Shown here: one piece after another, positions 11,101-57,201 of the stretch
Position numbering within the stretch: the stretch's first letter is position 1
How the letters are laid out: every line of letters begins with the position of its first letter
Assembly (NCBI RefSeq): GCF_021869535.1
Contig: NW_026262734.1
Span: forward strand, 9,672,001 to 9,736,000
Direction: 5' to 3'
Length of the DNA stretch: 64,000 nucleotides
From: Mytilus californianus
Lineage: Eukaryota
Notes under the pieces: model-generated
Database searches by the model: none
What the model saw: only the letters and a program-made list of their open reading frames with translations
Told to the model about the DNA's origin: nothing
Program-made: the position numbers and the translations under genes

Positions 11101-14100
11101 CTTTAATATGTTGAATCTAACCGTGTATTTAGTTTTTGGATTTTGGGCCCCGTTTTTAAATTGATCCACATTGAGGTCCAAAGGGTCAAAAATTAAACTT
11201 TGTTTGATTTCATCAAAAATTGAATTGTTGGGGTTCTTTGATATGCCGAATCTAACTGTGTATTTAGATTCTTAATTTTTGGTTCCGTTTTCAAATTGGT
11301 CTACATTAAGGTCCAAAGGGTCCAAAATTAAACTTAGTTTGATTTTAACAAAAATTGAATTCTTAGGGTTCTTTGATATGCTGAATCTAAACATGTATTT
11401 AGATTTTTGATTATGGGCCCAGTTTTCAAGTTGGTCCAAATCGGGGTCCAAAATTAAACTTTGTTTGATTTCAACAAAAATTGAATATATGGGGTTCTTT
11501 GATATGCTGAATCTAACCATGTATTTAGATTTTGATTTTTGGGCCCCATTATCAACTTTGTCCACATTGAGGTCAAAAGGGTCCAAAATTAAACTTTGTT
11601 TGATTTCATCAAAAATTGAATTCTTGGGGTTCTTTGATATGCTGAATCTAACCATGTATTTAGATTTTGGATATTAGACCATAATAGGTGAATGTCCAAT
11701 TTAAAATTTTTAAGTTCTTAGACCACATTCATTCTGTGTCAGAAACCTATGATGTGTCAAATATTTAATCACAATCCAAATGCAAAGCTGTATCAAGCTT
11801 GAATGTTGTGTCCATACTTGCCCCAACTGTTCAGGGTTCGACCTCTGCGGTCGTATCAAGCTGCGCCCTGCAGAGCATTTTATTAAATACTTGTCTTGAT
11901 CTTAATCTACAGCGGACTCATTATTATTCATTTGTTACTAATTTTCATAGATTTCATGGGTTTAAAAATATAAGATTTCAACAAAATATAACTTTTGTAT
12001 AGTATTGTATACATAATTTATCAAAACCATGAAAATACAATTTTCAACAATCCAAAAGAATTGGTAACCACTTTACTTTTCATATATATGTAACACTCTC
12101 AAACGTGTCCATCCCCTCCCAAACATGTCTATTTTGTCCAAACATGTCCTTAAAATCCCAAATCACCCAAATGTGTCCTATTTCACATCCCCCAAATGTG
12201 TCAGATAATTGTTATTCGCCAAAACGTGTCCACTTTAAAATGTCACGATATCTCAAAAATTTTAGTGTTAATATGCCCTCAGCGACATCAATAACATTTA
12301 CGGTACATTCACTAAAGAGACATAAACAAGAGAAATAACTTTGCATGTATTATAAGCATCCATGATACCAGCCAAAATAATTAATTGTTAGAAAAACATG
12401 TATTACTTAAAGGAAGCGTTAAAATACAGTATGTGAAACTTGCAAGATGTGCATTTAAGTCATTTCAAATGTGCATCATCTTATTTACCTGTCATATTAC
12501 GTTAAATTTATTATTAAAGAGGTCAAAATTCACTAACAGAAAATAATGGATTAACTGATTGTTGCTTGCTTAAAATTTGGTGGCAATTATTTCATGCATA
12601 TTTAGGACAAAAGATTGATTGATTGTTGGTTGGTTGCCTAACGTCCAGTGGCAAATATTTCATGCATGTTTAGGATGACATTATATTACAAATAAATATT
12701 AGGCACATTTTCAGCGTTTTTTTTTTAAATATGGACACCATTGAGCGTTCACAAAAAGGAGACGTTTAGGTTTCAATGGTGTAATAAAATGGACATGATT
12801 GGGCATTCATAAAAAGGACATCTTTTGGTGCCATTTAGCAACTAGATATGCAAGAAAAAGAGCTATATGCTGTTTCACCATGAAAACTAGATAAAACAGA
12901 AATATCTCAGTGGAAATGTATAAATAAAATTATCAATAGGTTACAAGAGCAAAATCTAAAGATACTGTACATCCTTGTCAGAGTAAGAGAGGACTTATAT
13001 CTTACTGCAGCATGTTTGAGATCTTTCATGTTTTGCACCTTACACAGTGTTTGAATGTTTTTCATAGGTTACCAATACCTTTGAATGCATCCTTCTAAAT
13101 ATTAAATAATACTGCAGAGAAGAATCTTTTTCTTTACTTGCTTGACATAAAGAGTTTGTACGTCTTCAAATGAAAATTTCTGTATGTCAGTATAAAATAC
13201 TTACTCAAACACTATACTTGGCATGACAACCTCTAGTAGTGATTCTTTGATTGGCCCAAAGGGCAATAACCCAGTGTAAAATACTTACTCAAACACTATA
13301 CTTAGCATGACAACCACTAGTAGTGATTCTTTGATTGGCACAAAGGGCAATAACCCAGTATAAAATACTTACTCAAACACTATACTTGGCATGACAACCT
13401 CTAGTAGTGATTCTTTGATTGGCACAAAGGGCAATAACCCAGTGTAAAATAATACAAGTAGCAATATCACTTTCTGCATGGAGAAAATTAATGGAATATC
13501 AGGATTCTGAAAAGGAAAATTTGAAGATACTGTGTATATTTATATACATGTATTAACATCATGTGTGTAAGGTTTTAACTTCTGAAATGGAACCCTAGAA
13601 TAAATTACGAATTAGCAAGTACACTGAGGTAAAAATAAAAAGCTGAGTCACATACTTATGCAAATTATCTACATGAATGCAATTTTGTATCTGGCAAAAA
13701 ATACAGCAAAGTGAAGGAATAGGTCACTGCATGTTAAAATATTTGATTTTGTAATTTCTTAGGAAAGTAAAACAAAGATAGCCGACCTGTGTTAAGACTA
13801 ACATTTATTGATAATTTTTTTTACAGGAAATGTAGATCGAAAATTTTAGCAGCCACAGCCCTCTTTTATGGTTGACAATTTTTGCCTCCTTTTTGAAAAT
13901 CCTGGATCTGCTATTGCTTGTACACAAAACATTAGTATATCAGATATCAGTTATAATATATTTGAATTCTGTATAACATATTAGCTTTATAACTTCAAAT
14001 TTATTGATTTAAAAAGAAAACTGCCTGAAATTTATAATCTTCCCCTTAATATATAGAGCATGAAATAATTGCCGCTGGAGGTTAAGCAACAAACAATAAA

Positions 14101-25437: not shown

Positions 25438-27060
25438 AATAAAATTGAGAATGGAAATGGGGAATGTGTCAAAGAGACAACAACCCGACCAAAGAGCAGA
25501 AAACAGCCCAAGGCCACCAATGGGTCTTCAACACAGCGAGAAAATACCGCACCCGGAGGTGGGCTTCAGCTGGCCCCTAAACAAAAATGTGCACCAGTTC
25601 AGTGAAAATGGACGTCACACTAAACTCCGAAACATATAAACGAACTAAAATTAGAAAAAAGCATACAAGCCTAACAAAGGCCAGAGGCTCCTGACTTTGG
25701 GACAGGCGCAAAACATGTTTTGTGAGATCTCAACCGTGCCTCCTCCTATACCTCTAGTTAATGTAGAATAAACAAACACACAGCAATACGCATAGTAAAA
25801 CTCAGTTTAAAAGAAGTCCGAGCCCGATATCAGAATAGATAACAGAAAAAACTAAGCAAAATGATAATGATACATAAATTAACAAAGGACTACTAGCCGC
25901 GTGAGTTACTGACATGCCAGCTCCAGACCGCAATTAAACTGATTGAAAGAGTATGTCTTCATAATATGAAAATCAAGCACAATCCCTCCCGTTAGGGTTT
26001 TAGTATCCTACCATCATAAAATATATGAGAAGAACATAACCCGTATCATGCCAACTACTGGTTTTTGAATAAATGTGTTTATTTCCGATGCAAAGAACCT
26101 ATGAGTGAATCAATATTAATACCAAAATATGCCATCTTTAATGACCTGACAACAGTATCGTAACTATATCCCTTCTGAATAAGTCTGCTTAAAGGTTTGG
26201 TTAGCTTTTGAGGTGAATGCCAACATTTTTGTGCTTTGTAAAGAATAGTACCATAAAAGATTGGATGTGAAATGCCCGAACGTAAAAGATGTCTGCATGT
26301 TGATGTATATTAACGAATGATGTCCTTGTACCGATGATAAAATTTAGTAAATGTTTTGACTAGTTTGTAATATCGAAAACCCTGGTGTAATAATTTTTCG
26401 GTAATACAGAGATTTTTTTTCGTTAAAATCAAATATGTTGTTTCATACACGAGCGAATCGAAGAAGTCGCGATATATAAACACCATAAGATGGTGACAAG
26501 GGAACGTCACCATTTAAAAATGGATAATTAACAATAAGAAATGAAAAATCATCTCTTTTATCGTAAATTTTGGTATTAAGCTTCCCGTTAAAGATATAGA
26601 TACCAAGATCCAGGAAAGGGCAGTGTTCATTAATTGTTAGTATTAGCTTTATTTAAAGTCAGTTCAGCAGGATACATCTCTTTAGTGTACATACTGAAGT
26701 CGTCATTATTGAGAGCCAATATATTATCAAAATATCTAAATGTGTTATAAAATTTTTGTATCAGATGTTGTTTCGATGGGTCTTTGCTGATTTTAGTCAT
26801 AAATTGTAACTCATAACAATACAGAAACAGGTCCGCTATACGTGGTGCACAGTTAGTCCCCATTGGAATTCCGATAACTCGACGACTTACGGAATCTCCA
26901 TAGCGAACAAAAATGTTTTCTAGTAAAAATTCAAGTGCAGTTATCGTATCAGAGCAGGTCCAATTGACATTGTTCTTTTGTTTGTTGTAACTAAAAAATG
27001 ACTTTAAAGAGTTTGAACATATGTATTTGTATTCTGACATTTTAAATCATCAATTAAAGT
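25438..27060 (-). mobile_element. 5'-truncated Penelope-like retroelement (RT core/thumb plus 3' UTR), no downstream GIY-YIG seen
   Basis: VIGIPMGTNCAPRIADLFLYCYE, FRYFDNIL, KIYDKRDDFSFLIVNYPFLNGDVPLSPSYGVYISRLLRFARV and KLLHQGFRYYKLVKTFTKFYHRYKDII, with frameshifts. The same 3' tip occurs alone at 58291-58463. Confidence 0.75.
25956..26033 (-). promoter_or_regulatory. SECIS-like hairpin in the 3' UTR of the Penelope-like element
   Basis: TCTTCTCATAT-ATTTT-ATGA-TGGTAGGATACT-AAAA-CCC-TAAC-GGG-A-GGGATTGTGCTT-GA-TTTTC-ATATTATGAAGA. ATGA at 26017-26014, AAAA at 26001-25998, GA at 25974-25973. Helix II has two mismatches and several G-U pairs. Confidence 0.55.
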
Positions 27061-27953
27061 TATAAAAAATGGAATAAAAAGTAACTATGTTAGTCCAGTT
27101 CAATAAGTTTATCATTTACAACATAAAATGTGTACTAATTTGTTAATACTTGGCTCGTACACCCCTTCAATTCAGAAGTATTTTCTTTATGGATTTATTA
27201 TTATAAGGAAACAAATATTTGCTGTCATAAAACAATAGGGGATTGAAGTCATGTAATGCAAATGAGCGAATTCATGTTGTATTATGACACGACGCTATAT
27301 TGTTTTATCGTATTTCTTATTGTCATATAGTCGAACTGCAAAAGTGTGTTAACTTAGTAATGCTGTAAGAAATTAATAAAAAAAAAAAAAAAAAAAAGCA
27401 TTGGCAGCCACATATAGCCCGAGAACACAGTTATTTCGTAGTGCATTTCTTTTAGACAATAAATTCAAATTAAAAAAATCGCACCAGTCCTGCTCTATCT
27501 CAAAAAGATGTTTACAGTGTAGTATACTACTATTGATACAAATAATATCAAAATTATAGAAACTTCTACCAGCTCTAACTCAAAATATTGACAATTCTGT
27601 GTTAAGGGGGGCTAAAATTCAGTTTGACAGCTTCAGACATTCTAATTTTTGACCTTTTTTAACTGGACCAAATCACTACTTAACATAAAGATTCAGCACC
27701 CAAATTTTTTTTAACATGTAATTTCATCCCCTTACTTAACATTTAATGCATAATATATCAAGAAATAAATTGGAAAATGTATAAAAAAAAATGCAAGTTA
27801 TACACTGTTCACACTAGGGACTATATTCGTACACAACGAAAACCAAAGGACGATAACTGTGTCCTTGGACCATATACAATTTATAAATCAATGAATAAAC
27901 AATAATTATGTAACTGCTAAAACACAACAAAATACGGAATTTAAGCATATGAT

Positions 27954-28024
27954 GACAAGAAGTTCGATCCAGCTAAAGCCAACATGCTCTGTTTTCAGCT
28001 ATAACTATCATACACTTTCTTGTC
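27954..28024 (-). promoter_or_regulatory. SECIS element (type II) in the SelL 3' UTR
   Basis: Minus strand: GACAAGAAAGT-GT-ATGA-TAGTTATAGCTG-AAA-ACA-GAGCA-TGT-TGGCTTTAGCTG-GA-TCGA-ACTTCTTGTC. ATGA at 28011-28008, a 12-position helix II with one T-T mismatch, unpaired AAA, an ACA/TGT mini-stem, GA at 27969-27968, and a 10-bp helix I with one bulge. Confidence 0.9.
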
Positions 28025-28083
28025 GATAATCAAATACTATATTAAAGTCCAGCAATTTGGTTGTAAACTTAGTTTTGTCACAT

Positions 28084-28989
28084 TTATTTCTCACAATCTT
28101 TAAGAGCTTCAAGCAACGTTGGAATTAATGGTCTATCGCTCGAATTTTTACTGCAATACAAAAAGGTAACATCTCCATTTTTATTTATAATGAAATCGCC
28201 TCCCATCTGGATTGCATCGTCATGGATGTTTTCATAAGGTTTCGGTAGTGGTATACCCTGTGTCATCTTCTCAGCATAGTATACCATACTACCAACACCC
28301 CACACTTTTGCTACCGATCTTGGAAGACCAAACGCTAAATATATGCGTCTTTCAGTATCCAAAAGCATCGGGAAACTCGACTTTGTTTCTTCTAACCACT
28401 TTTCCGCACCTTCTTTTAGTCCAAATGAAATAAGAATTACTGACCCGTTTGCTTTTGTAATGTCATCTATGGCTTCTTCAAGCTGTGCAACGTGATTTCG
28501 TCATGGTAATCACGCGAAATGTCTAAGTAAAACCAGAACAATGTGCTTTCCTCCTGTTAAGAACTGATTTATGGAAGTAGCTTTACCTGAGCGTGCATCC
28601 ACCAGCTCAGCATCAACAGGTGATTTATCTCCAATACTTAATACTTTTCCATTAGACAAAGCACCCATTCTTTGATCAAGGTCTTTAAGGATAGAATCCC
28701 ATTCATCCTCAGTGTCAACTAATTCATCGTGTAAGTCTCTAACATCTGAATGCCTAAAATATTTTCTAATCAATCGTTCAAATTCCTCCTTTGTTTTAAC
28801 GTTATGCTTTTGGAAAACATTTTTGTAAACAAACGCAAGACTGAACAGTTTCTTTATCTTGTCATCTACGAATACTGAAAAACCATTTTCCTCTCTCAAA
28901 ATGTCTCTACTATATTTAATCAACTGCTCTTCTTTATCATTTAGTTCTTTAAGAGAAGACACTATGTCCGCAACAACTTCGTCTTCCAT
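28084..28989 (-). CDS. SELENOL: Selenoprotein L (thioredoxin-like AhpC/TSA fold, UxxU motif), 301 aa, one coding exon
   Basis: Track ORFs 28510-28992 and 28084-28368 are in the same frame. They join through TTC GCG TGA TTA CCA TGA CGA AAT CAC (FA-U-LP-U-RNH), with UGA at 28512-28510 (U160) and 28503-28501 (U163) and no other stop. The ATG is at 28989; the track start at 28992 is a GTG. The C-terminal QMGGDFII...DRP motif is typical of the PRXL2/SelL family. A SECIS lies downstream. Confidence 0.93.
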
Positions 28990-29854
28990 CACTTTATTTG
29001 TTTACATGATTGCCACGCCCCCTTTCTGAAACGGAAGTTAGAAAATATCCAAAGTAAAATTTGAAGTAAACCGTTTCCGGACATTTCTAAGTTTCCAAGC
29101 AGACAACTTATTTACTAACATCTTAAGTTATGTTCAACCAATACATGAAATTTATAACATAGAAATTCTATCATGTTAAGTTACTATATACTAATATATG
29201 TATAATTCAATTGAAAGTACTAGTATATAATACAATATGATCACTAATAGAAGAGGAGACTGTCACGGAATAGAAGTTCCTTCATAATTTAAGTTCCAAA
29301 TGGAAACAATATTCTGGAATATTATTTCCACTGGAATAAATATTACAGTAAATGTTCCTAACGGAATAAATGGTATAGAATATTTGTTCCAACAGGAACA
29401 GATATTATGACATTGTTTATAACAAAGTTTCCAGTGGAACTTCTGTTAGGCGGAACAAATATACGTTGACACCCCCACTCCCTGTATCCGCCACTGGTAT
29501 TTTATCCAATTTGCGTTAGCGTTCATTCCATTAATCTAGTACTAGTATAATAGCTGTACTCTTCTGATAAACTGCCACGGTGACATTAAGTTGTGTAATA
29601 ATTTTTAAAAAATGCTTCAAACTATTATATTATCTGTAAATTATGTACTATTACCGATTCATTATTTTACTGTTGTAAACATATAATGATTAATTATGTT
29701 TTACCTGCAATATTACATTTTATAGATTGTTTTCCATACTGCTAGTTACCGGGCCACACAGGTATGACAGTTTAAGGTCAGATTACCTGTACAATTTTAT
29801 ATATCAACATTGTGGTATTTCACGTAAACAAAATGGATGTTATTAACACATAAA
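28990..29854. promoter_or_regulatory. Shared divergent intergenic region between SelL and the hillarin-like gene
   Basis: 865 bp between opposed start codons. KLF/Sp-type CCACGCCC at 29013-29020, ETS-like ACGGAAGT at 29031-29038, forkhead-type TTGTTTAC at 28998-29005 and GTAAACAA at 29824-29831. Motif matches only. Confidence 0.5.
29261..29471. mobile_element. Possible MITE with short TIRs and recurring GGAA/TTCC submotifs
   Basis: The ends TGTCACGGAATA and (reverse complement) TGTCAACGTATA match only partly. The interior is made of AATATT..TTCC / GGAA..AATAT motifs. Confidence 0.3.
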
Positions 29855-35800: not shown

Positions 35801-38800
35801 GAATTGTCACTATATCTGTAAATTTCTTATTTTCCATCTAACATTTCCAAATATTTCTGTTCACAGCTACCAGGAGAAAACAATCTTTCGAGAAGTTCTA
35901 GTCCAAAACCAGTCCCTAGCCCTCGGAATAGCCCAAGGGTTAGTCCCAAGGTAACAAGAGCTTCAACACCTAGAGGAAACAGCACCGTAGATTCTAGTCT
36001 GGTCAGCGTTACACCAAGGAGTACTATGAATGATATATCAAGCTTTATGCAGACGCCTCATAGCATGGACTATAGTACCATGTCAGCAACGAGCTATCTA
36101 CGACCGAAGCCACCACTGCAAAGCTTCAGTGTAAGATTACTTTTAAATGTTCTCTTTTCACATCGTTTTTAAAAGTCTTTCGAAAATTCTTTACACAAAC
36201 ATGCACGTTTGACGGGCTTCTATAACTACCTATTGCATGTTCAAGAACGGGTTCATTGGCAATTTCGCTGGTCAAGAATCTTGCATGCGTTTCAGATAAC
36301 TTTCAAATATACTACCCAGGGCGAATTTGTCAGGCTATACTAATTTCTACCGGATGCGTTAAGTACTAGAAAAATGTGCCCTTACATAAAAAATAGATAT
36401 AGAATATTTTCACTTGACTGTCTTTTGACCTTTTGCGACTAAAGGATTTTTTATAAAGAATAACACATTATGGAGAAGTATATACTTTTTAAATTATTTT
36501 TGGTTATACTCGTGCATAGATTCAAAATTATATTGCATTTGGTGATAGGACAGGTATCATGAATTAAGTTACGATAATGCTAAAACAGTTGACAATACAC
36601 TACCTATATCATAAATAAACTCGTCATAGATACCAGGGTTAAACTTGTGAAGGTCAGACGCGCGTTTCGTCTACACAAGACTCATCAGTGGCTCTCGAAT
36701 AAATAAATAGCCAAGTAAAATACGAAGTTGAAGATATGATAGTCATGTGATAAAGAACTTTGAAGCGACTAATTCCATGACTATTTTTTGTTGTTCTTTT
36801 CGCTTAATAGTGTGTATTGTAAGATTTTCTTACATTTCAGGACTTTGAAACCAGTGGTGTTTTCCAAGGTCAGTTCATTTTAGAACAGAGGCACAGAGAA
36901 GAGGAAGAACGATTACAAAGATTTTTATTGGAAGAGAGAGAAAAAGAGATGAGAAGGTTGGATGAAACCATTGGTTACGAAAAAGAAAGAGCAGCTTCCG
37001 AGCTTCTGTCAAGTTTTGAGCAGATGTCACTTTCGGGAAGTACCCCTAATTTAATGGCTGAGAGGGAAAGAATAGAAGAACATTTCAGACGTATGAGAGA
37101 AGAAAAACTGAAAACAATGATGGACAAAATATCAACAGAGGAGAAAACTAGAACAGCAAAGATGCTGGATCGTCATGGATTCGAAATGATGCTCTTGATT
37201 TCGGAGAAGGTACGTACATATTTAAATTTACAAGAAGGGATATATAATGAATGTACCCTTACACAGTCAATTAATATGCTGTATAAAGTAGAAAACAACA
37301 TATCTATAAAAACTATATGTTGTTAATCTTAAGTGAGTACTAGATGATTCTGTATATAAGGGAAAACGTATAGGCAAAAAACACAATATCAATTGCAAAA
37401 GAAAAATACCCCATGCAGAAGTACTAGTGCATATGGATGGATACCCCATATCCTTTGTTTTTCTATTGTATCAAAGGATTTGTGCTGGTTTTTATCTGAA
37501 TAGTTGCTGAAAAATGTTCATTGATATATTACAGGGTCGAAGTATAAAAATATTTTTATTGATTATCTAGTCACATTATTCAGAGGAAACTTTTCTATTT
37601 TTTTCTGTCAGAGTCTAATTTTAAGTAGTTTACTTTATTTTAATATTTGTTTAACAGGACAAGGAATTTGACAGAACAGCTATATATGACCATTCAATGA
37701 AACCTGCAACAATGTCCCCAGAAACAAAGAAAGGGGAACTGTACAAGTCACCTGAAGTTTTTGAACAGTTGGATAAACGTGCTATCGAGGTAAAACGCTT
37801 TGAATAATTTTTTTTATTCAAATATAGTGAATATAAAGAATAACAATATAGGAAGATAGAGATGATACTGCTAATTACTGTAAACACATAATCAGATTTT
37901 TGGTGGACGTTTCGTTTCCGAGGGTATCACAAGCCCAGTATTCAGTACTTGTATTGCCATGAAATATCATTGATATGTTCATTATTGTGTTAATTTATTA
38001 TTTATAAAAAGATGAAGGTTTTTCTATTCCCAGGCCTAGATTGCCATAACCATTTTTGGCACAATTTGTAGGAATTGTCGGCTGTTAATAATCTCCAACT
38101 TCTTATTTGATTTGGCCTTTCATCTGTTTTGATTCGAGCGCCACTGATGAGTCTTATTAAGATTAAACTCATGGTTGGCGTATCAAATTATAAGCCTGGT
38201 ATCTTTGATGAATTTTGTTATCGTTTGTAGTGTGCCAATCAAGACTACAGTTCCTTTACAGATTTAATCAAAGATTTGACACGTGAATGTGAAACTGAAC
38301 TTGAAAAGGCTAGGTTTGTATATAAAAAGATTTGTAAGAGCACTATGTGGAAAGAAACAATAAAAAGAATTTGAAATATTAAAGCATTTCAAACGAATTT
38401 CAAAATTTGAATAGCCCCAAATTAAGAGTAAAAATATATGTTTCGATTGATAATTCCCTGTGTTTGTAAAAACGATTCATATGAATGAAGAACAACACAT
38501 TTTAGCAAAAAATAGATACCTTTTAAAATATTAAAATAAATGGTAACTGAAATCTAGTACATGTATTTGAAATCCTTTGTGATTTCATTAAGTGAATCTA
38601 TTTACTAAAAGATTAGTAGAATTAAAATATGTGAATGAATTACTGTGTTTTTTTATGGGTTTAATATTAAATCAGTGAATCCAGGAAATATCAATGCATT
38701 TTACAAAAATATAGTGAATGTTATTATGAATAATCTCGAATGAATTATAAATTAAATAGTCAAATTTACTGAAAATATCAACTGAACAAAACCCTTTAGT

Positions 38801-57040: not shown

Positions 57041-57201
57041 AGATTCCACCACTACATCAAGTGTATTACGATATTTCTCCACTCTACACAGTTAAATTTT
57101 AAAATTTAAATCGCGAGGCTTGCCGAGCTTTTTAAATATTTAAAATTTAACTGTTGAGAGTGGAGAAATATCGTAATACACGAGATAAAGTGGCGGAATC
57201 T
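57041..57201. mobile_element. Palindromic (foldback) MITE
   Basis: ~70-bp inverted arms AGATTCC(A/G)CCACT...GTGTATTACGATATTTCTCCACTCT...CAGTTAAATTTTAAA around a short loop. Confidence 0.75.

What the first reader, a model, noticed from the sequence alone, without database searches (positions are those of the whole stretch)
27954..28989. Hidden selenoprotein L with a UxxU double-selenocysteine active site
What the ORF track shows as two unrelated ORFs is one 301-aa reading frame with UGA at codons 160 and 163, in the redox position of a thioredoxin fold, plus a textbook SECIS 60 nt after the TAA. SelL is the family known for a UxxU motif forming a diselenide bond, with a patchy distribution in aquatic organisms and absent from mammals. 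Automated annotation usually truncates, splits or mis-splices such genes, so this locus may be unannotated or mislabelled as a PRXL2A-like fragment.
Basis: partly seen in the sequence, partly recalled or inferred. Interest (0 to 1): 0.8.

Follow-up and report, generated by a model that had tools for sequence, protein, structure and literature searches.

The report
Mussel selenoprotein L gene (UxxU)
This is a real, expressed bivalve gene for selenoprotein L, a redox protein whose two active-site residues are selenocysteines written as UGA "stop" codons. The family is already known from fish and other aquatic animals, so it is a correct catch but not a new kind of thing.

Summary
On the minus strand, one 301-codon frame (ATG 28989 to TAA 28084) carries TGA at codons 160 and 163 (RHFA-U-LP-U-R). 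A canonical type-2 SECIS lies 64 nt after the stop (28019-27955).

- **Conservation.** Eleven related contigs, at least one from a bivalve, keep TGA at both positions. Neighbouring codons vary synonymously, and both halves are under purifying selection (dN/dS 0.10 and 0.24).
- **SECIS.** Every relative with enough 3' sequence has a SECIS with compensatory base changes. A covariance model built only from those SECIS elements finds the window's element as top hit in 64 kb (39 bits, E 5e-6).
- **Expression.** Stranded RNA-seq covers the coding exon without any splice removing the UGA pair. It shows one 679-nt intron in the 5' UTR, which a relative's transcript shares.
- **Family.** Both halves align collinearly with RefSeq fish "selenoprotein L" (E 2e-22 and 1e-28), including the N-terminal helical domain. 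The UxxU falls on the CxxC of Cys homologues, at the strand-to-helix turn of a peroxiredoxin-like fold.
- **Annotation.** Public gene models of relatives split this gene or splice out the UxxU segment.

SelL, its UxxU and its aquatic distribution are published. This is a new member of a known kind. Sec insertion itself is not shown.

The parts
29705..29785 (-). Exon 1, non-coding 5' UTR (minimum extent; the true transcription start is not mapped)
   Evidence: The joint 29025->29705 is seen in RNA reads and in one contig. A relative's transcript contig, L010, aligns 1-81 to 29785-29705 and then jumps to 29024.
29026..29704 (-). 5' UTR intron, 679 nt, GT..AG on the minus strand
   Evidence: joint, 'skips 679, ends CT..AC' on the + strand. 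Donor GT at 29704-29703 and acceptor AG at 29027-29026. The same junction is used in L010.
27842..29025 (-). Exon 2 as far as it is supported by unique sequence: rest of the 5' UTR, the whole CDS, and the 3' UTR with the SECIS. The 3' end is unresolved because the exon runs into a repeat at 27871.
   Evidence: X21 stranded reads give continuous one-direction coverage over 27901-29025. The X2 contig of 1209 nt spans 27842-29025 plus 25 nt of exon 1.
29002..29007 (-). Minimal upstream ORF (AUG-UAA) in the 5' UTR. Its UAA is in frame with the main ORF and closes it upstream.
   Evidence: sequence only; function not tested.
28084..28989 (-). Selenoprotein L coding sequence, 301 codons plus TAA, in a single exon
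   Evidence: translation. Pfam AhpC-TSA_2 on residues 164-301 at 1.2e-13. Collinear match to fish SelL P0205. dN/dS 0.10 and 0.24 against L010.
28510..28512 (-). UGA codon 160, first predicted selenocysteine
   Evidence: TGA in all 11 related loci. Aligns with the first Cys of the CxxC in Cys homologues.
28501..28503 (-). UGA codon 163, second predicted selenocysteine
   Evidence: TGA in all 11 related loci. Aligns with the second Cys of the CxxC in Cys homologues.
27955..28019 (-). Type-2 SECIS element in the 3' UTR: AUGA 28011-28008, unpaired AA 27995-27994, GA 27969-27968
   Evidence: Rfam SECIS_1 23.2 bits. Fold. Conserved structure with 9 of 14 pairs showing compensatory change among orthologues. 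Orthologue-only covariance model 39.1 bits, E 4.9e-6.
27194..27199 (-). AATAAA, a candidate polyadenylation signal if the 3' UTR runs through the inserted repeat (tentative)
   Evidence: Same-direction stranded reads at 27101-27300, falling to 0.06 at 27001-27100. Motif located. Continuity across the repeat at 27417-27871 is not shown.

Best explanation
The locus is the selenoprotein L (SELENOL) orthologue of a bivalve mollusc.

**Gene structure.** A two-exon mRNA is made from the minus strand. Exon 1 is a short non-coding leader. Exon 2 carries the whole 301-codon ORF and the 3' UTR.

**Recoding (inferred).** During translation, the two UGA codons at positions 160 and 163 are read as selenocysteine. 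The single type-2 SECIS hairpin, about 500 nt downstream in the 3' UTR, would recruit SBP2, eEFSec and Sec-tRNA to do this.

**Protein.** The product has an N-terminal helical domain of about 130 residues and a C-terminal peroxiredoxin-like thioredoxin fold. The U-L-P-U motif sits at the end of strand beta1 and the first turn of helix alpha1, which is the position of the catalytic CxxC.

**Chemistry (inferred).** By analogy with zebrafish SelL, the two selenols cycle between the reduced state and an intramolecular diselenide, acting as a very low-potential redox centre. Its substrate is unknown.

**Shown here:** the reading frame, the conservation of both UGAs and both flanks, the SECIS, transcription without removal of the UGA pair, and homology with named SelL.

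**Inferred:** actual Sec insertion, diselenide formation, and the redox function.
For: - **Frame and UGAs:**
- **Domain:** the C-terminal half matches Pfam AhpC-TSA_2 at 1.2e-13. Its AhpC-TSA match starts at profile position 43.
- **Conserved motif:** eleven related loci (L001-L011, 38-88% protein identity) all read LLRHFA-TGA-x-P-TGA-R. The neighbouring Leu, Arg, Ala and Pro codons vary synonymously.
- **Selection:** dN/dS against the closest relative is 0.10 upstream and 0.24 downstream of the UGAs. Differences between the RNA reads and the window sequence are 9 synonymous to 5 non-synonymous, on both sides.
- **SECIS:** canonical fold. It is conserved with compensatory changes and found by a model trained without it, at 39.1 bits and E 4.9e-6.
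- **Transcription:** stranded RNA-seq shows a minus-strand transcript across both UGAs with no joint there, plus a GT-AG 5' UTR intron. A relative's mRNA contig shares the intron. A more distant relative's contig ends in poly(A), so it is an mRNA, and it keeps both TGAs and a SECIS.
- **Family:** both pieces are collinear with RefSeq 'selenoprotein L' P0205, at E 2e-22 (N half) and 1e-28 (C half). The four-residue gap falls on C-L-L-S.
- **Active-site position:** the pieces flank the CxxC of Cys homologues exactly. In an AlphaFold model of the CxxC homologue P0061 (pLDDT 93.9), the CxxC at 171-174 lies between strand 160-165 and helix 172-183. The best solved match is human PGFS/PRXL2B, itself a CxxC enzyme, at TM 0.81.
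- **Literature:** SelL has two Sec residues two positions apart, inserted by a single SECIS (PMC3316567). It forms a diselenide and is restricted to aquatic organisms (PMC2397514, PMC13134290).
Against: - There is no direct evidence of Sec insertion: no 75Se labelling, mass spectrometry or ribosome profiling.
- The Rfam SECIS_1 score (23.2 bits) is below the gathering score of 35, and at whole-window scale it is not significant across all families.
- SECISearch3 and Seblastian were not available.
- Some fish proteins named SelL have C..S instead of U..U, so the second position is not strictly required in the family.
- The 3' end of the mRNA is unresolved, because a repeat (27417-27871) sits about 80 nt beyond the SECIS.
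- No phylogeny with SelU/PRXL2 outgroups was built.
Confidence: 0.88

Rival explanations
1. The gene is functional, but the UGAs mostly terminate translation. The main product would be the 159-residue N-terminal domain, and full-length selenoprotein would be minor or depend on selenium supply.
For: Sec decoding is generally inefficient, and two closely spaced UGAs compound this (general knowledge). The N-terminal part has the lower dN/dS, 0.10.
Against: The C-terminal 138 codons are also under purifying selection (dN/dS 0.24). They keep all near-invariant family residues. A SECIS is conserved with covariation in all orthologues. None of this would hold if the downstream part were not translated.
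Confidence: 0.07
2. It is a member of the SelU/PRXL2 (peroxiredoxin-like 2) family rather than SelL, carrying an extra Sec.
For: The Pfam domain is the same, AhpC-TSA_2. The best solved structural neighbour of the family model is human PRXL2B/PGFS. Some database names for relatives are 'peroxiredoxin-like 2C' or 'AAED1'.
Against: A sequence search of the C-terminal half against all PDB chains finds nothing at E <= 1 except chance sigma-factor hits. That PDB set includes human PGFS, which is present in the fold-search library. The same piece matches fish SelL at 1e-28. The ~130-residue N-terminal domain also aligns with fish SelL at 2e-22. From general knowledge, not tested here, PRXL2A/B/C lack such a domain. 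An earlier scan note, not checked by me, places a separate UxxC SelU/PRXL2C gene elsewhere in this genome.
Confidence: 0.03
3. It is a decaying pseudogene or retrocopy of a peroxiredoxin-like gene that happens to carry two nonsense mutations.
For: The CDS and 3' UTR lie in a single exon, and the gene is flanked by repeats.
Against: The identical TGA pair occurs in 11 loci, whose synonymous sites are saturated except in the closest relative. dN/dS is well below 1 on both sides. There are no frameshifts or other stops. The gene is expressed, has a spliced 5' UTR intron and a conserved SECIS. No second copy exists in the window.
Confidence: 0.02

Closest known systems
Vertebrate (fish) selenoprotein L / SELENOL (first described in zebrafish by Shchedrina et al. 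2007, as cited in PMC2397514 and PMC3316567)
   Same: - About 300 residues.
- N-terminal helical domain followed by a Prx-like thioredoxin fold.
- Redox motif at the same place (RHF[AG]-x-L-x-x-R-[DN]-H).
- Two Sec residues two positions apart, served by one 3' UTR SECIS.
- Aquatic host.
- Collinear alignment with RefSeq SelL P0205 at 34-35% identity.
   Different: - The coding sequence is in one exon here. Fish gene models with the motif segment missing (P0116, P0209) suggest a multi-exon fish gene, which was not verified.
- The named percomorph SelL retrieved here has C..S rather than U..U.
- The SECIS lies only 64 nt after the stop.
Invertebrate SelL genes predicted in sponge, placozoan, sea anemone, annelid and amphioxus (PMC3473315, Table 1)
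   Same: They belong to the same family and have the same two-Sec architecture. They were likewise predicted from a UGA pair plus a SECIS.
   Different: That survey found no SelL in its one mollusc, the limpet Lottia gigantea. Here the gene is present and expressed in a bivalve. Relatives exist in Tegillarca granosa and the gastropod Biomphalaria glabrata, where one GenBank model is already named 'selenoprotein L'.
Bacterial and eukaryotic SelL-like CxxC proteins (about 180 residues, motif RHLGCxPCR[ED]H)
   Same: They have the same Prx-like domain and the same motif position. They appear among the hits of the large search.
   Different: They have Cys instead of Sec and lack the N-terminal helical domain.
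Human prostamide/prostaglandin F synthase (PRXL2B, SelU3 family; PDB 9usa, 9us9)
   Same: It is the nearest solved fold to the family's C-terminal domain (TM 0.81 by target), and its active site is a CxxC (C44/C47).
   Different: There is no detectable sequence similarity to the window protein. By general knowledge it lacks the N-terminal domain and uses Cys rather than Sec.

Membership tests
Selenoprotein L (SELENOL) | Two in-frame UGA codons separated by two codons (UxxU) | tested here: met
   TGA at codons 160 and 163. Invariant in 11 related loci.
Selenoprotein L (SELENOL) | UxxU occupies the CxxC redox position of a thioredoxin/peroxiredoxin-like fold | tested here: met
   The window pieces flank the CxxC column block of Cys homologues. 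In the AF2 model of the CxxC homologue, the motif lies between strand 160-165 and helix 172-183. The window protein itself could not be folded through the stops.
Selenoprotein L (SELENOL) | Full-length collinear homology with a named vertebrate SelL, including the N-terminal domain | tested here: met
   N piece residues 8-159 align to P0205 residues 4-161 at E 2e-22. C piece residues 1-133 align to residues 166-298 at E 1e-28. P0205 is named 'selenoprotein L [Archocentrus centrarchus]'.
Selenoprotein L (SELENOL) | A single eukaryotic SECIS in the 3' UTR serving both UGAs | tested here: met
   One SECIS at 28019-27955, orthologous to the SECIS elements of relatives, with covariation. The next SECIS-like hit, 25960-26025, is about 2 kb further on, scores 22.5 bits, and probably belongs to a retroelement.
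Selenoprotein L (SELENOL) | The mRNA retains the UGA pair (it is not spliced out or edited) | tested here: met
   Depth is 13x at 28501-28600, with no joint and no variant listed at the two codons. An RNA-derived contig spans them.
Selenoprotein L (SELENOL) | Incorporation of two Sec residues and formation of an intramolecular diselenide | not testable with these tools
   This needs 75Se labelling or mass spectrometry. It is known only for zebrafish SelL, by citation in PMC2397514.
Selenoprotein L (SELENOL) | Phylogenetic separation from SelU/PRXL2 paralogues | not tested
   No SelU sequences were obtained from a tool. Indirect support: no PDB sequence hit to PRXL2B, against 1e-28 to SelL.
SelU / PRXL2 (peroxiredoxin-like 2) | Detectable sequence similarity to PRXL2A/B/C, and a single-domain architecture of about 200-230 residues | tested here: not met
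   phmmer against PDB chains gives no PRXL2B hit at E <= 1. The protein has an extra N-terminal domain of about 130 residues, shared with SelL. Only the fold is similar.
Typical peroxiredoxin (AhpC/TSA) | Peroxidatic Cys within the PxxxTxxC motif | tested here: not met
   The motif here is RHFAULPUR, with no Thr/Pro context. The Pfam AhpC-TSA match is weak (1.3e-6) and starts after the active site.

The most novel reading that the evidence does not exclude
In bivalves, SelL may be a functional retrogene. The whole ORF and its SECIS sit in one exon, both in this window and in a genomic contig of a relative with 74% protein identity (L001). A separate non-coding leader exon would have been acquired afterwards. 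In that case an mRNA-derived copy, SECIS included, replaced the ancestral multi-exon gene. That would be a clean natural example of a selenoprotein gene surviving retroposition because its recoding signal travels with the 3' UTR.
Probability: 0.25. Interest if true: 0.4.

Novelty: new member of a known kind. Interest (0 to 1): 0.3.

Why it matters
SelL is the only natural protein family reported to hold a diselenide bond in a redox motif, and its function is still unknown (PMC13134290; bioRxiv 10.1101/2025.10.02.680026). A verified, expressed bivalve orthologue has three uses.

- It corrects a gene that standard pipelines break. In every related record examined, the gene was split, truncated or mis-spliced.
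- It extends the documented mollusc record. A 2012 survey found no SelL in its one mollusc, the limpet Lottia.
- It gives a compact one-exon construct of ORF plus SECIS, about 1.04 kb, from an easily obtained animal, for biochemical work on diselenide chemistry.

It does not change what is known about the family.

Tried and rejected
- **Generic SECIS scan.** Rfam SECIS_1 alone was inconclusive: 23.2 bits, below the gathering score, and absent from a whole-window scan at E <= 5. I replaced it with an orthologue-derived covariance model.
- **Word-based protein search.** With the C-terminal piece it returned only seven unnamed fragments. Their names are generic ('peroxiredoxin', 'hypothetical protein') or absent, so I used the exhaustive search.
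- **Solved structures by sequence.** Only chance sigma-factor hits came back.
- **Papers.** The original SelL paper and the oyster selenoproteome paper are not held in the library. Statements about zebrafish SelL are therefore second-hand, from PMC2397514, PMC3316567 and PMC13134290.
- **One contig lookup.** P0094 was not on record.
- **Second SECIS.** I considered whether the SECIS-like element at 25960-26025 is a second SelL SECIS. I rejected this as unlikely: 22.5 bits with many non-canonical pairs, about 2 kb further on, beyond an AATAAA and the point where coverage falls to near zero. Other notes on this genome describe abundant SECIS-bearing Naiad retroelements.
- **Extra copies.** None of the gene was found in the window (tblastn).
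- **GDPD1 neighbour.** An ORF listing did not let me verify it.
- **Not run.** The window protein was never read through its stops in any search tool.

Full report
**1. The observation**

On the minus strand, the frame from ATG 28989-28987 to TAA 28086-28084 is 301 codons long. It is interrupted only by TGA at codon 160 (28512-28510) and codon 163 (28503-28501), giving ...HIVLVLLRHFA-U-LP-U-RNHVAQLEE.... A mechanical ORF list shows it as two ORFs. An in-frame TAA at 29004-29002 closes the frame upstream, so 28989 is the first AUG available. The C-terminal 138 residues match Pfam AhpC-TSA_2 (PF13911, 1.2e-13). More weakly, they match AhpC-TSA from profile position 43 onward. The N-terminal 159 residues match no Pfam family.

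**2. The SECIS**

Rfam SECIS_1 matches 28019-27955 on the minus strand at 23.2 bits, below its gathering score of 35 (E 0.14 for the 1.7 kb searched). It does not reach E <= 5 in a scan of the whole window against all families. So the generic score alone does not settle the matter.

The fold is a canonical type-2 SECIS (-23 kcal/mol, z -2.6):
- helix I
- AUGA (28011-28008) opposite GA (27969-27968), giving the A.G/G.A/U.U quartet
- a 12-nt helix II arm
- unpaired AA (27995-27994)
- an apical mini-stem with its loop (coordinates)

Orthologous elements lie 21-80 nt after the stop in six close relatives, and 426 nt after it in a distant one. An RNAalifold consensus of seven elements, six from relatives plus the window's own, has 14 pairs. 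Nine of them show at least one compensatory double change. A covariance model built from seven relatives only, without the window, finds 28019-27955 as the best hit in all 64 kb, at 39.1 bits and E 4.9e-6. The SECIS begins 64 nt after the stop and its AUGA 72 nt after. The two UGAs lie about 500 nt upstream of it.

**3. Comparative evidence that both UGAs are decoded**

A word-based protein search with the C-terminal piece returned seven fragments of 94-132 residues. I fetched their contigs (L001-L010). In nine of the ten, the gene callers had split the gene into two ORFs in the same way; the tenth, L005, is cut off upstream. In all ten, reading the frame through gives LLRHFA*LP*R, with TGA at both stops.

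- The neighbouring codons differ synonymously between species: Ala GCA/GCG/GCC/GCT, Leu TTA/CTT/CTC/TTG, Pro CCA/CCG, Arg AGA/CGC/CGT/CGA/CGG. The two TGAs never change.
- Against the closest relative (L010), dN/dS is 0.10 for the 159 codons before the motif and 0.24 for the 138 codons after it. For the more distant relatives, synonymous sites are saturated while protein identity stays at 57-74%.
- In the exhaustive search, full-length relatives of about 300 residues appear with 'W' at both positions. For P0046 I checked the DNA (L011): both are TGA, there is a SECIS in the 3' UTR, and the contig ends in poly(A), so it is an mRNA.
- Cys homologues carry CxxC at the same columns. These are P0061 and P0053 (Megalops) and bacterial-type proteins of about 180 residues with RHLGCxPCR[ED]H.

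**4. Transcription**

One raw, stranded RNA-seq run (X21) gives continuous coverage of 27901-29025 at 5-13x, in a single read direction. That direction fits a minus-strand RNA under the usual library convention. No joint removes or skips the UGA pair, and no variant is listed at either TGA.

The only joint touching the gene is 29025->29705. It skips 679 nt with CT..AC on the plus strand, which is GT..AG on the minus strand. One contig of run X2 (1209 nt) carries the same junction and spans 27842-29025, so that run is RNA-derived. The transcript contig L010, from a close relative (90% nucleotide identity in the CDS), is spliced at exactly the same place: L010 1-81 aligns to 29785-29705, and 82-1019 to 29024-28083.

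The gene therefore has a non-coding leader exon, a 5' UTR intron, and a single exon holding the ORF and SECIS. A genomic contig of a relative (L001, from a 112-kb contig) also has the ORF uninterrupted.

Fourteen differences between the RNA reads and the window sequence fall in the ORF. Nine are synonymous and five are not, and they are spread on both sides of the UGAs.

The 3' end is unresolved. A repeat at 27417-27871, with a poly-T tract beside it at 27364-27407, is covered on both strands at high depth and begins about 80 nt beyond the SECIS. Same-direction reads resume at 27101-27300 and stop near an AATAAA at 27199-27194.

**5. Family assignment**

A fish hit from the exhaustive search (P0116) led to RefSeq and UniProt entries named 'selenoprotein L'. 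Against one of them (P0205, Archocentrus centrarchus, 303 residues), the alignments are collinear:
- N-terminal piece, residues 8-159, to residues 4-161 (34% identity, E 2e-22)
- C-terminal piece, residues 1-133, to residues 166-298 (35% identity, E 1e-28)

The four residues left between them, C-L-L-S in the fish, correspond to U-L-P-U. The match thus includes the helical N-terminal domain of about 130 residues.

By contrast, a sequence search against all PDB chains finds nothing real. Those chains include human PGFS/PRXL2B, which is present in the fold-search library.

An AlphaFold model of the CxxC homologue P0061, built on a 38-sequence alignment (pLDDT 93.9, pTM 0.89), shows five N-terminal helices and a thioredoxin-type domain. 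The CxxC at 171-174 lies between strand 160-165 and helix 172-183. Its best solved neighbour is human PGFS/PRXL2B, a CxxC enzyme, at TM 0.81 by target.

**6. Organism and annotation**

The organism is coded in the read tools. One cluster of relatives contains a Tegillarca granosa (blood clam) protein. Earlier notes of this scan call the genome a Mytilus-type mussel. I did not verify that independently, but it is consistent with the bivalve relative.

- Tegillarca KAJ8308498.1 splices out the segment holding RHFAULPUR.
- Biomphalaria glabrata KAK6997796.1 ('selenoprotein L') and KAI8741268.1 ('peroxiredoxin-like 2C') do the same.
- Metagenome gene callers label the C-terminal fragment 'peroxiredoxin'.

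Whether this genome's own annotation is wrong could not be checked.

**7. Mechanism**

Shown here: the frame, the UGA pair, the SECIS, transcription, conservation and homology.

Inferred from the established eukaryotic Sec pathway and from published SelL work: the 3' UTR SECIS recruits SBP2, eEFSec and Sec-tRNA, so that both UGAs are read as Sec. The two selenols, at the CxxC position of the fold, cycle with an intramolecular diselenide. Published work supports each element: one SECIS serves both Sec residues (PMC3316567), a diselenide forms in SelL and the family is restricted to aquatic organisms (PMC2397514), and SelL has a peroxiredoxin-like motif and was lost in tetrapods (PMC13134290). 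The substrate and the role of the N-terminal domain remain unknown.

**8. Novelty and verdict**

SelL, its UxxU and its occurrence in aquatic invertebrates are published (PMC3473315 lists sponge, placozoan, cnidarian, annelid and amphioxus). That survey found none in its one mollusc, Lottia. However, a GenBank model in Biomphalaria already bears the name. A recent preprint treats SelL as an orthogroup of aquatic animals (10.1101/2025.10.02.680026).

This is therefore a correct identification of a new, well-supported member of a known family. It is useful for annotation but not surprising to a specialist.

The one mildly novel possibility is that the bivalve gene, with its single-exon ORF plus SECIS behind a separate leader exon, is a functional retrogene. 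I could not test this.

Noticed in passing
window 25960-26025 (-): A second SECIS-like element lies about 2 kb downstream on the same strand. It scores 19.1 bits with Rfam SECIS_1 and 22.5 bits (E 0.023) with the SelL-orthologue SECIS model. Another first-stage note (s1-314023) attributes it to a retrotransposon. Other notes on this genome describe abundant SECIS-bearing Naiad Penelope-like elements, a phenomenon published in PMC8557442.
   Followed up: partly
window 27417-27871, with a poly-T tract beside it at 27364-27407 on the minus strand: A dispersed repeat sits in or just beyond the SelL 3' UTR, about 80 nt past the SECIS. It is covered on both strands at 10-60 times the depth of the gene, and reads run off into other sequence at both ends. 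It prevents mapping of the mRNA's 3' end. A similar repeat lies inside the 5' UTR intron at about 29270-29471.
   Followed up: partly
window 36651-36693 (-): A Hammerhead_1 (type I hammerhead ribozyme) match at 26.1 bits, below the gathering score of 34, E 0.046 for the whole window. It may belong to a retroelement or retrozyme.
   Followed up: no
window 57068-57175 (-): A MIR8675 precursor-like match at 44.4 bits, well below the gathering score of 90.8, E 1.1e-5. It is probably a hairpin-forming repeat.
   Followed up: no
window 29002-29007 (-) and 28993, 29008: A minimal AUG-UAA upstream ORF lies 12 nt before the SelL start codon. In the RNA run, a 4-nt deletion at 28993 and a G>C at 29008 are seen in the few reads covering the 5' UTR.
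   Followed up: no
protein P0195 (Biomphalaria glabrata KAI8787897.1); window about 13188-13451: A 74-residue C-terminal fragment of Biomphalaria SelL is deposited under the name 'GDPD1_3'. Another first-stage note (s1-314051) places a GDPD1 exon in this window. Together these hint at conserved SelL-GDPD1 linkage in molluscs. I could not verify GDPD1 here.
   Followed up: partly
proteins P0205, P0217, P0218 (fish 'selenoprotein L'): The named percomorph SelL sequences retrieved here show C-L-L-S, C-L-A-S or W-V-P-C at the motif rather than UxxU. Either Sec has been replaced in these lineages, or the models are partly wrong. I did not examine their DNA.
   Followed up: no
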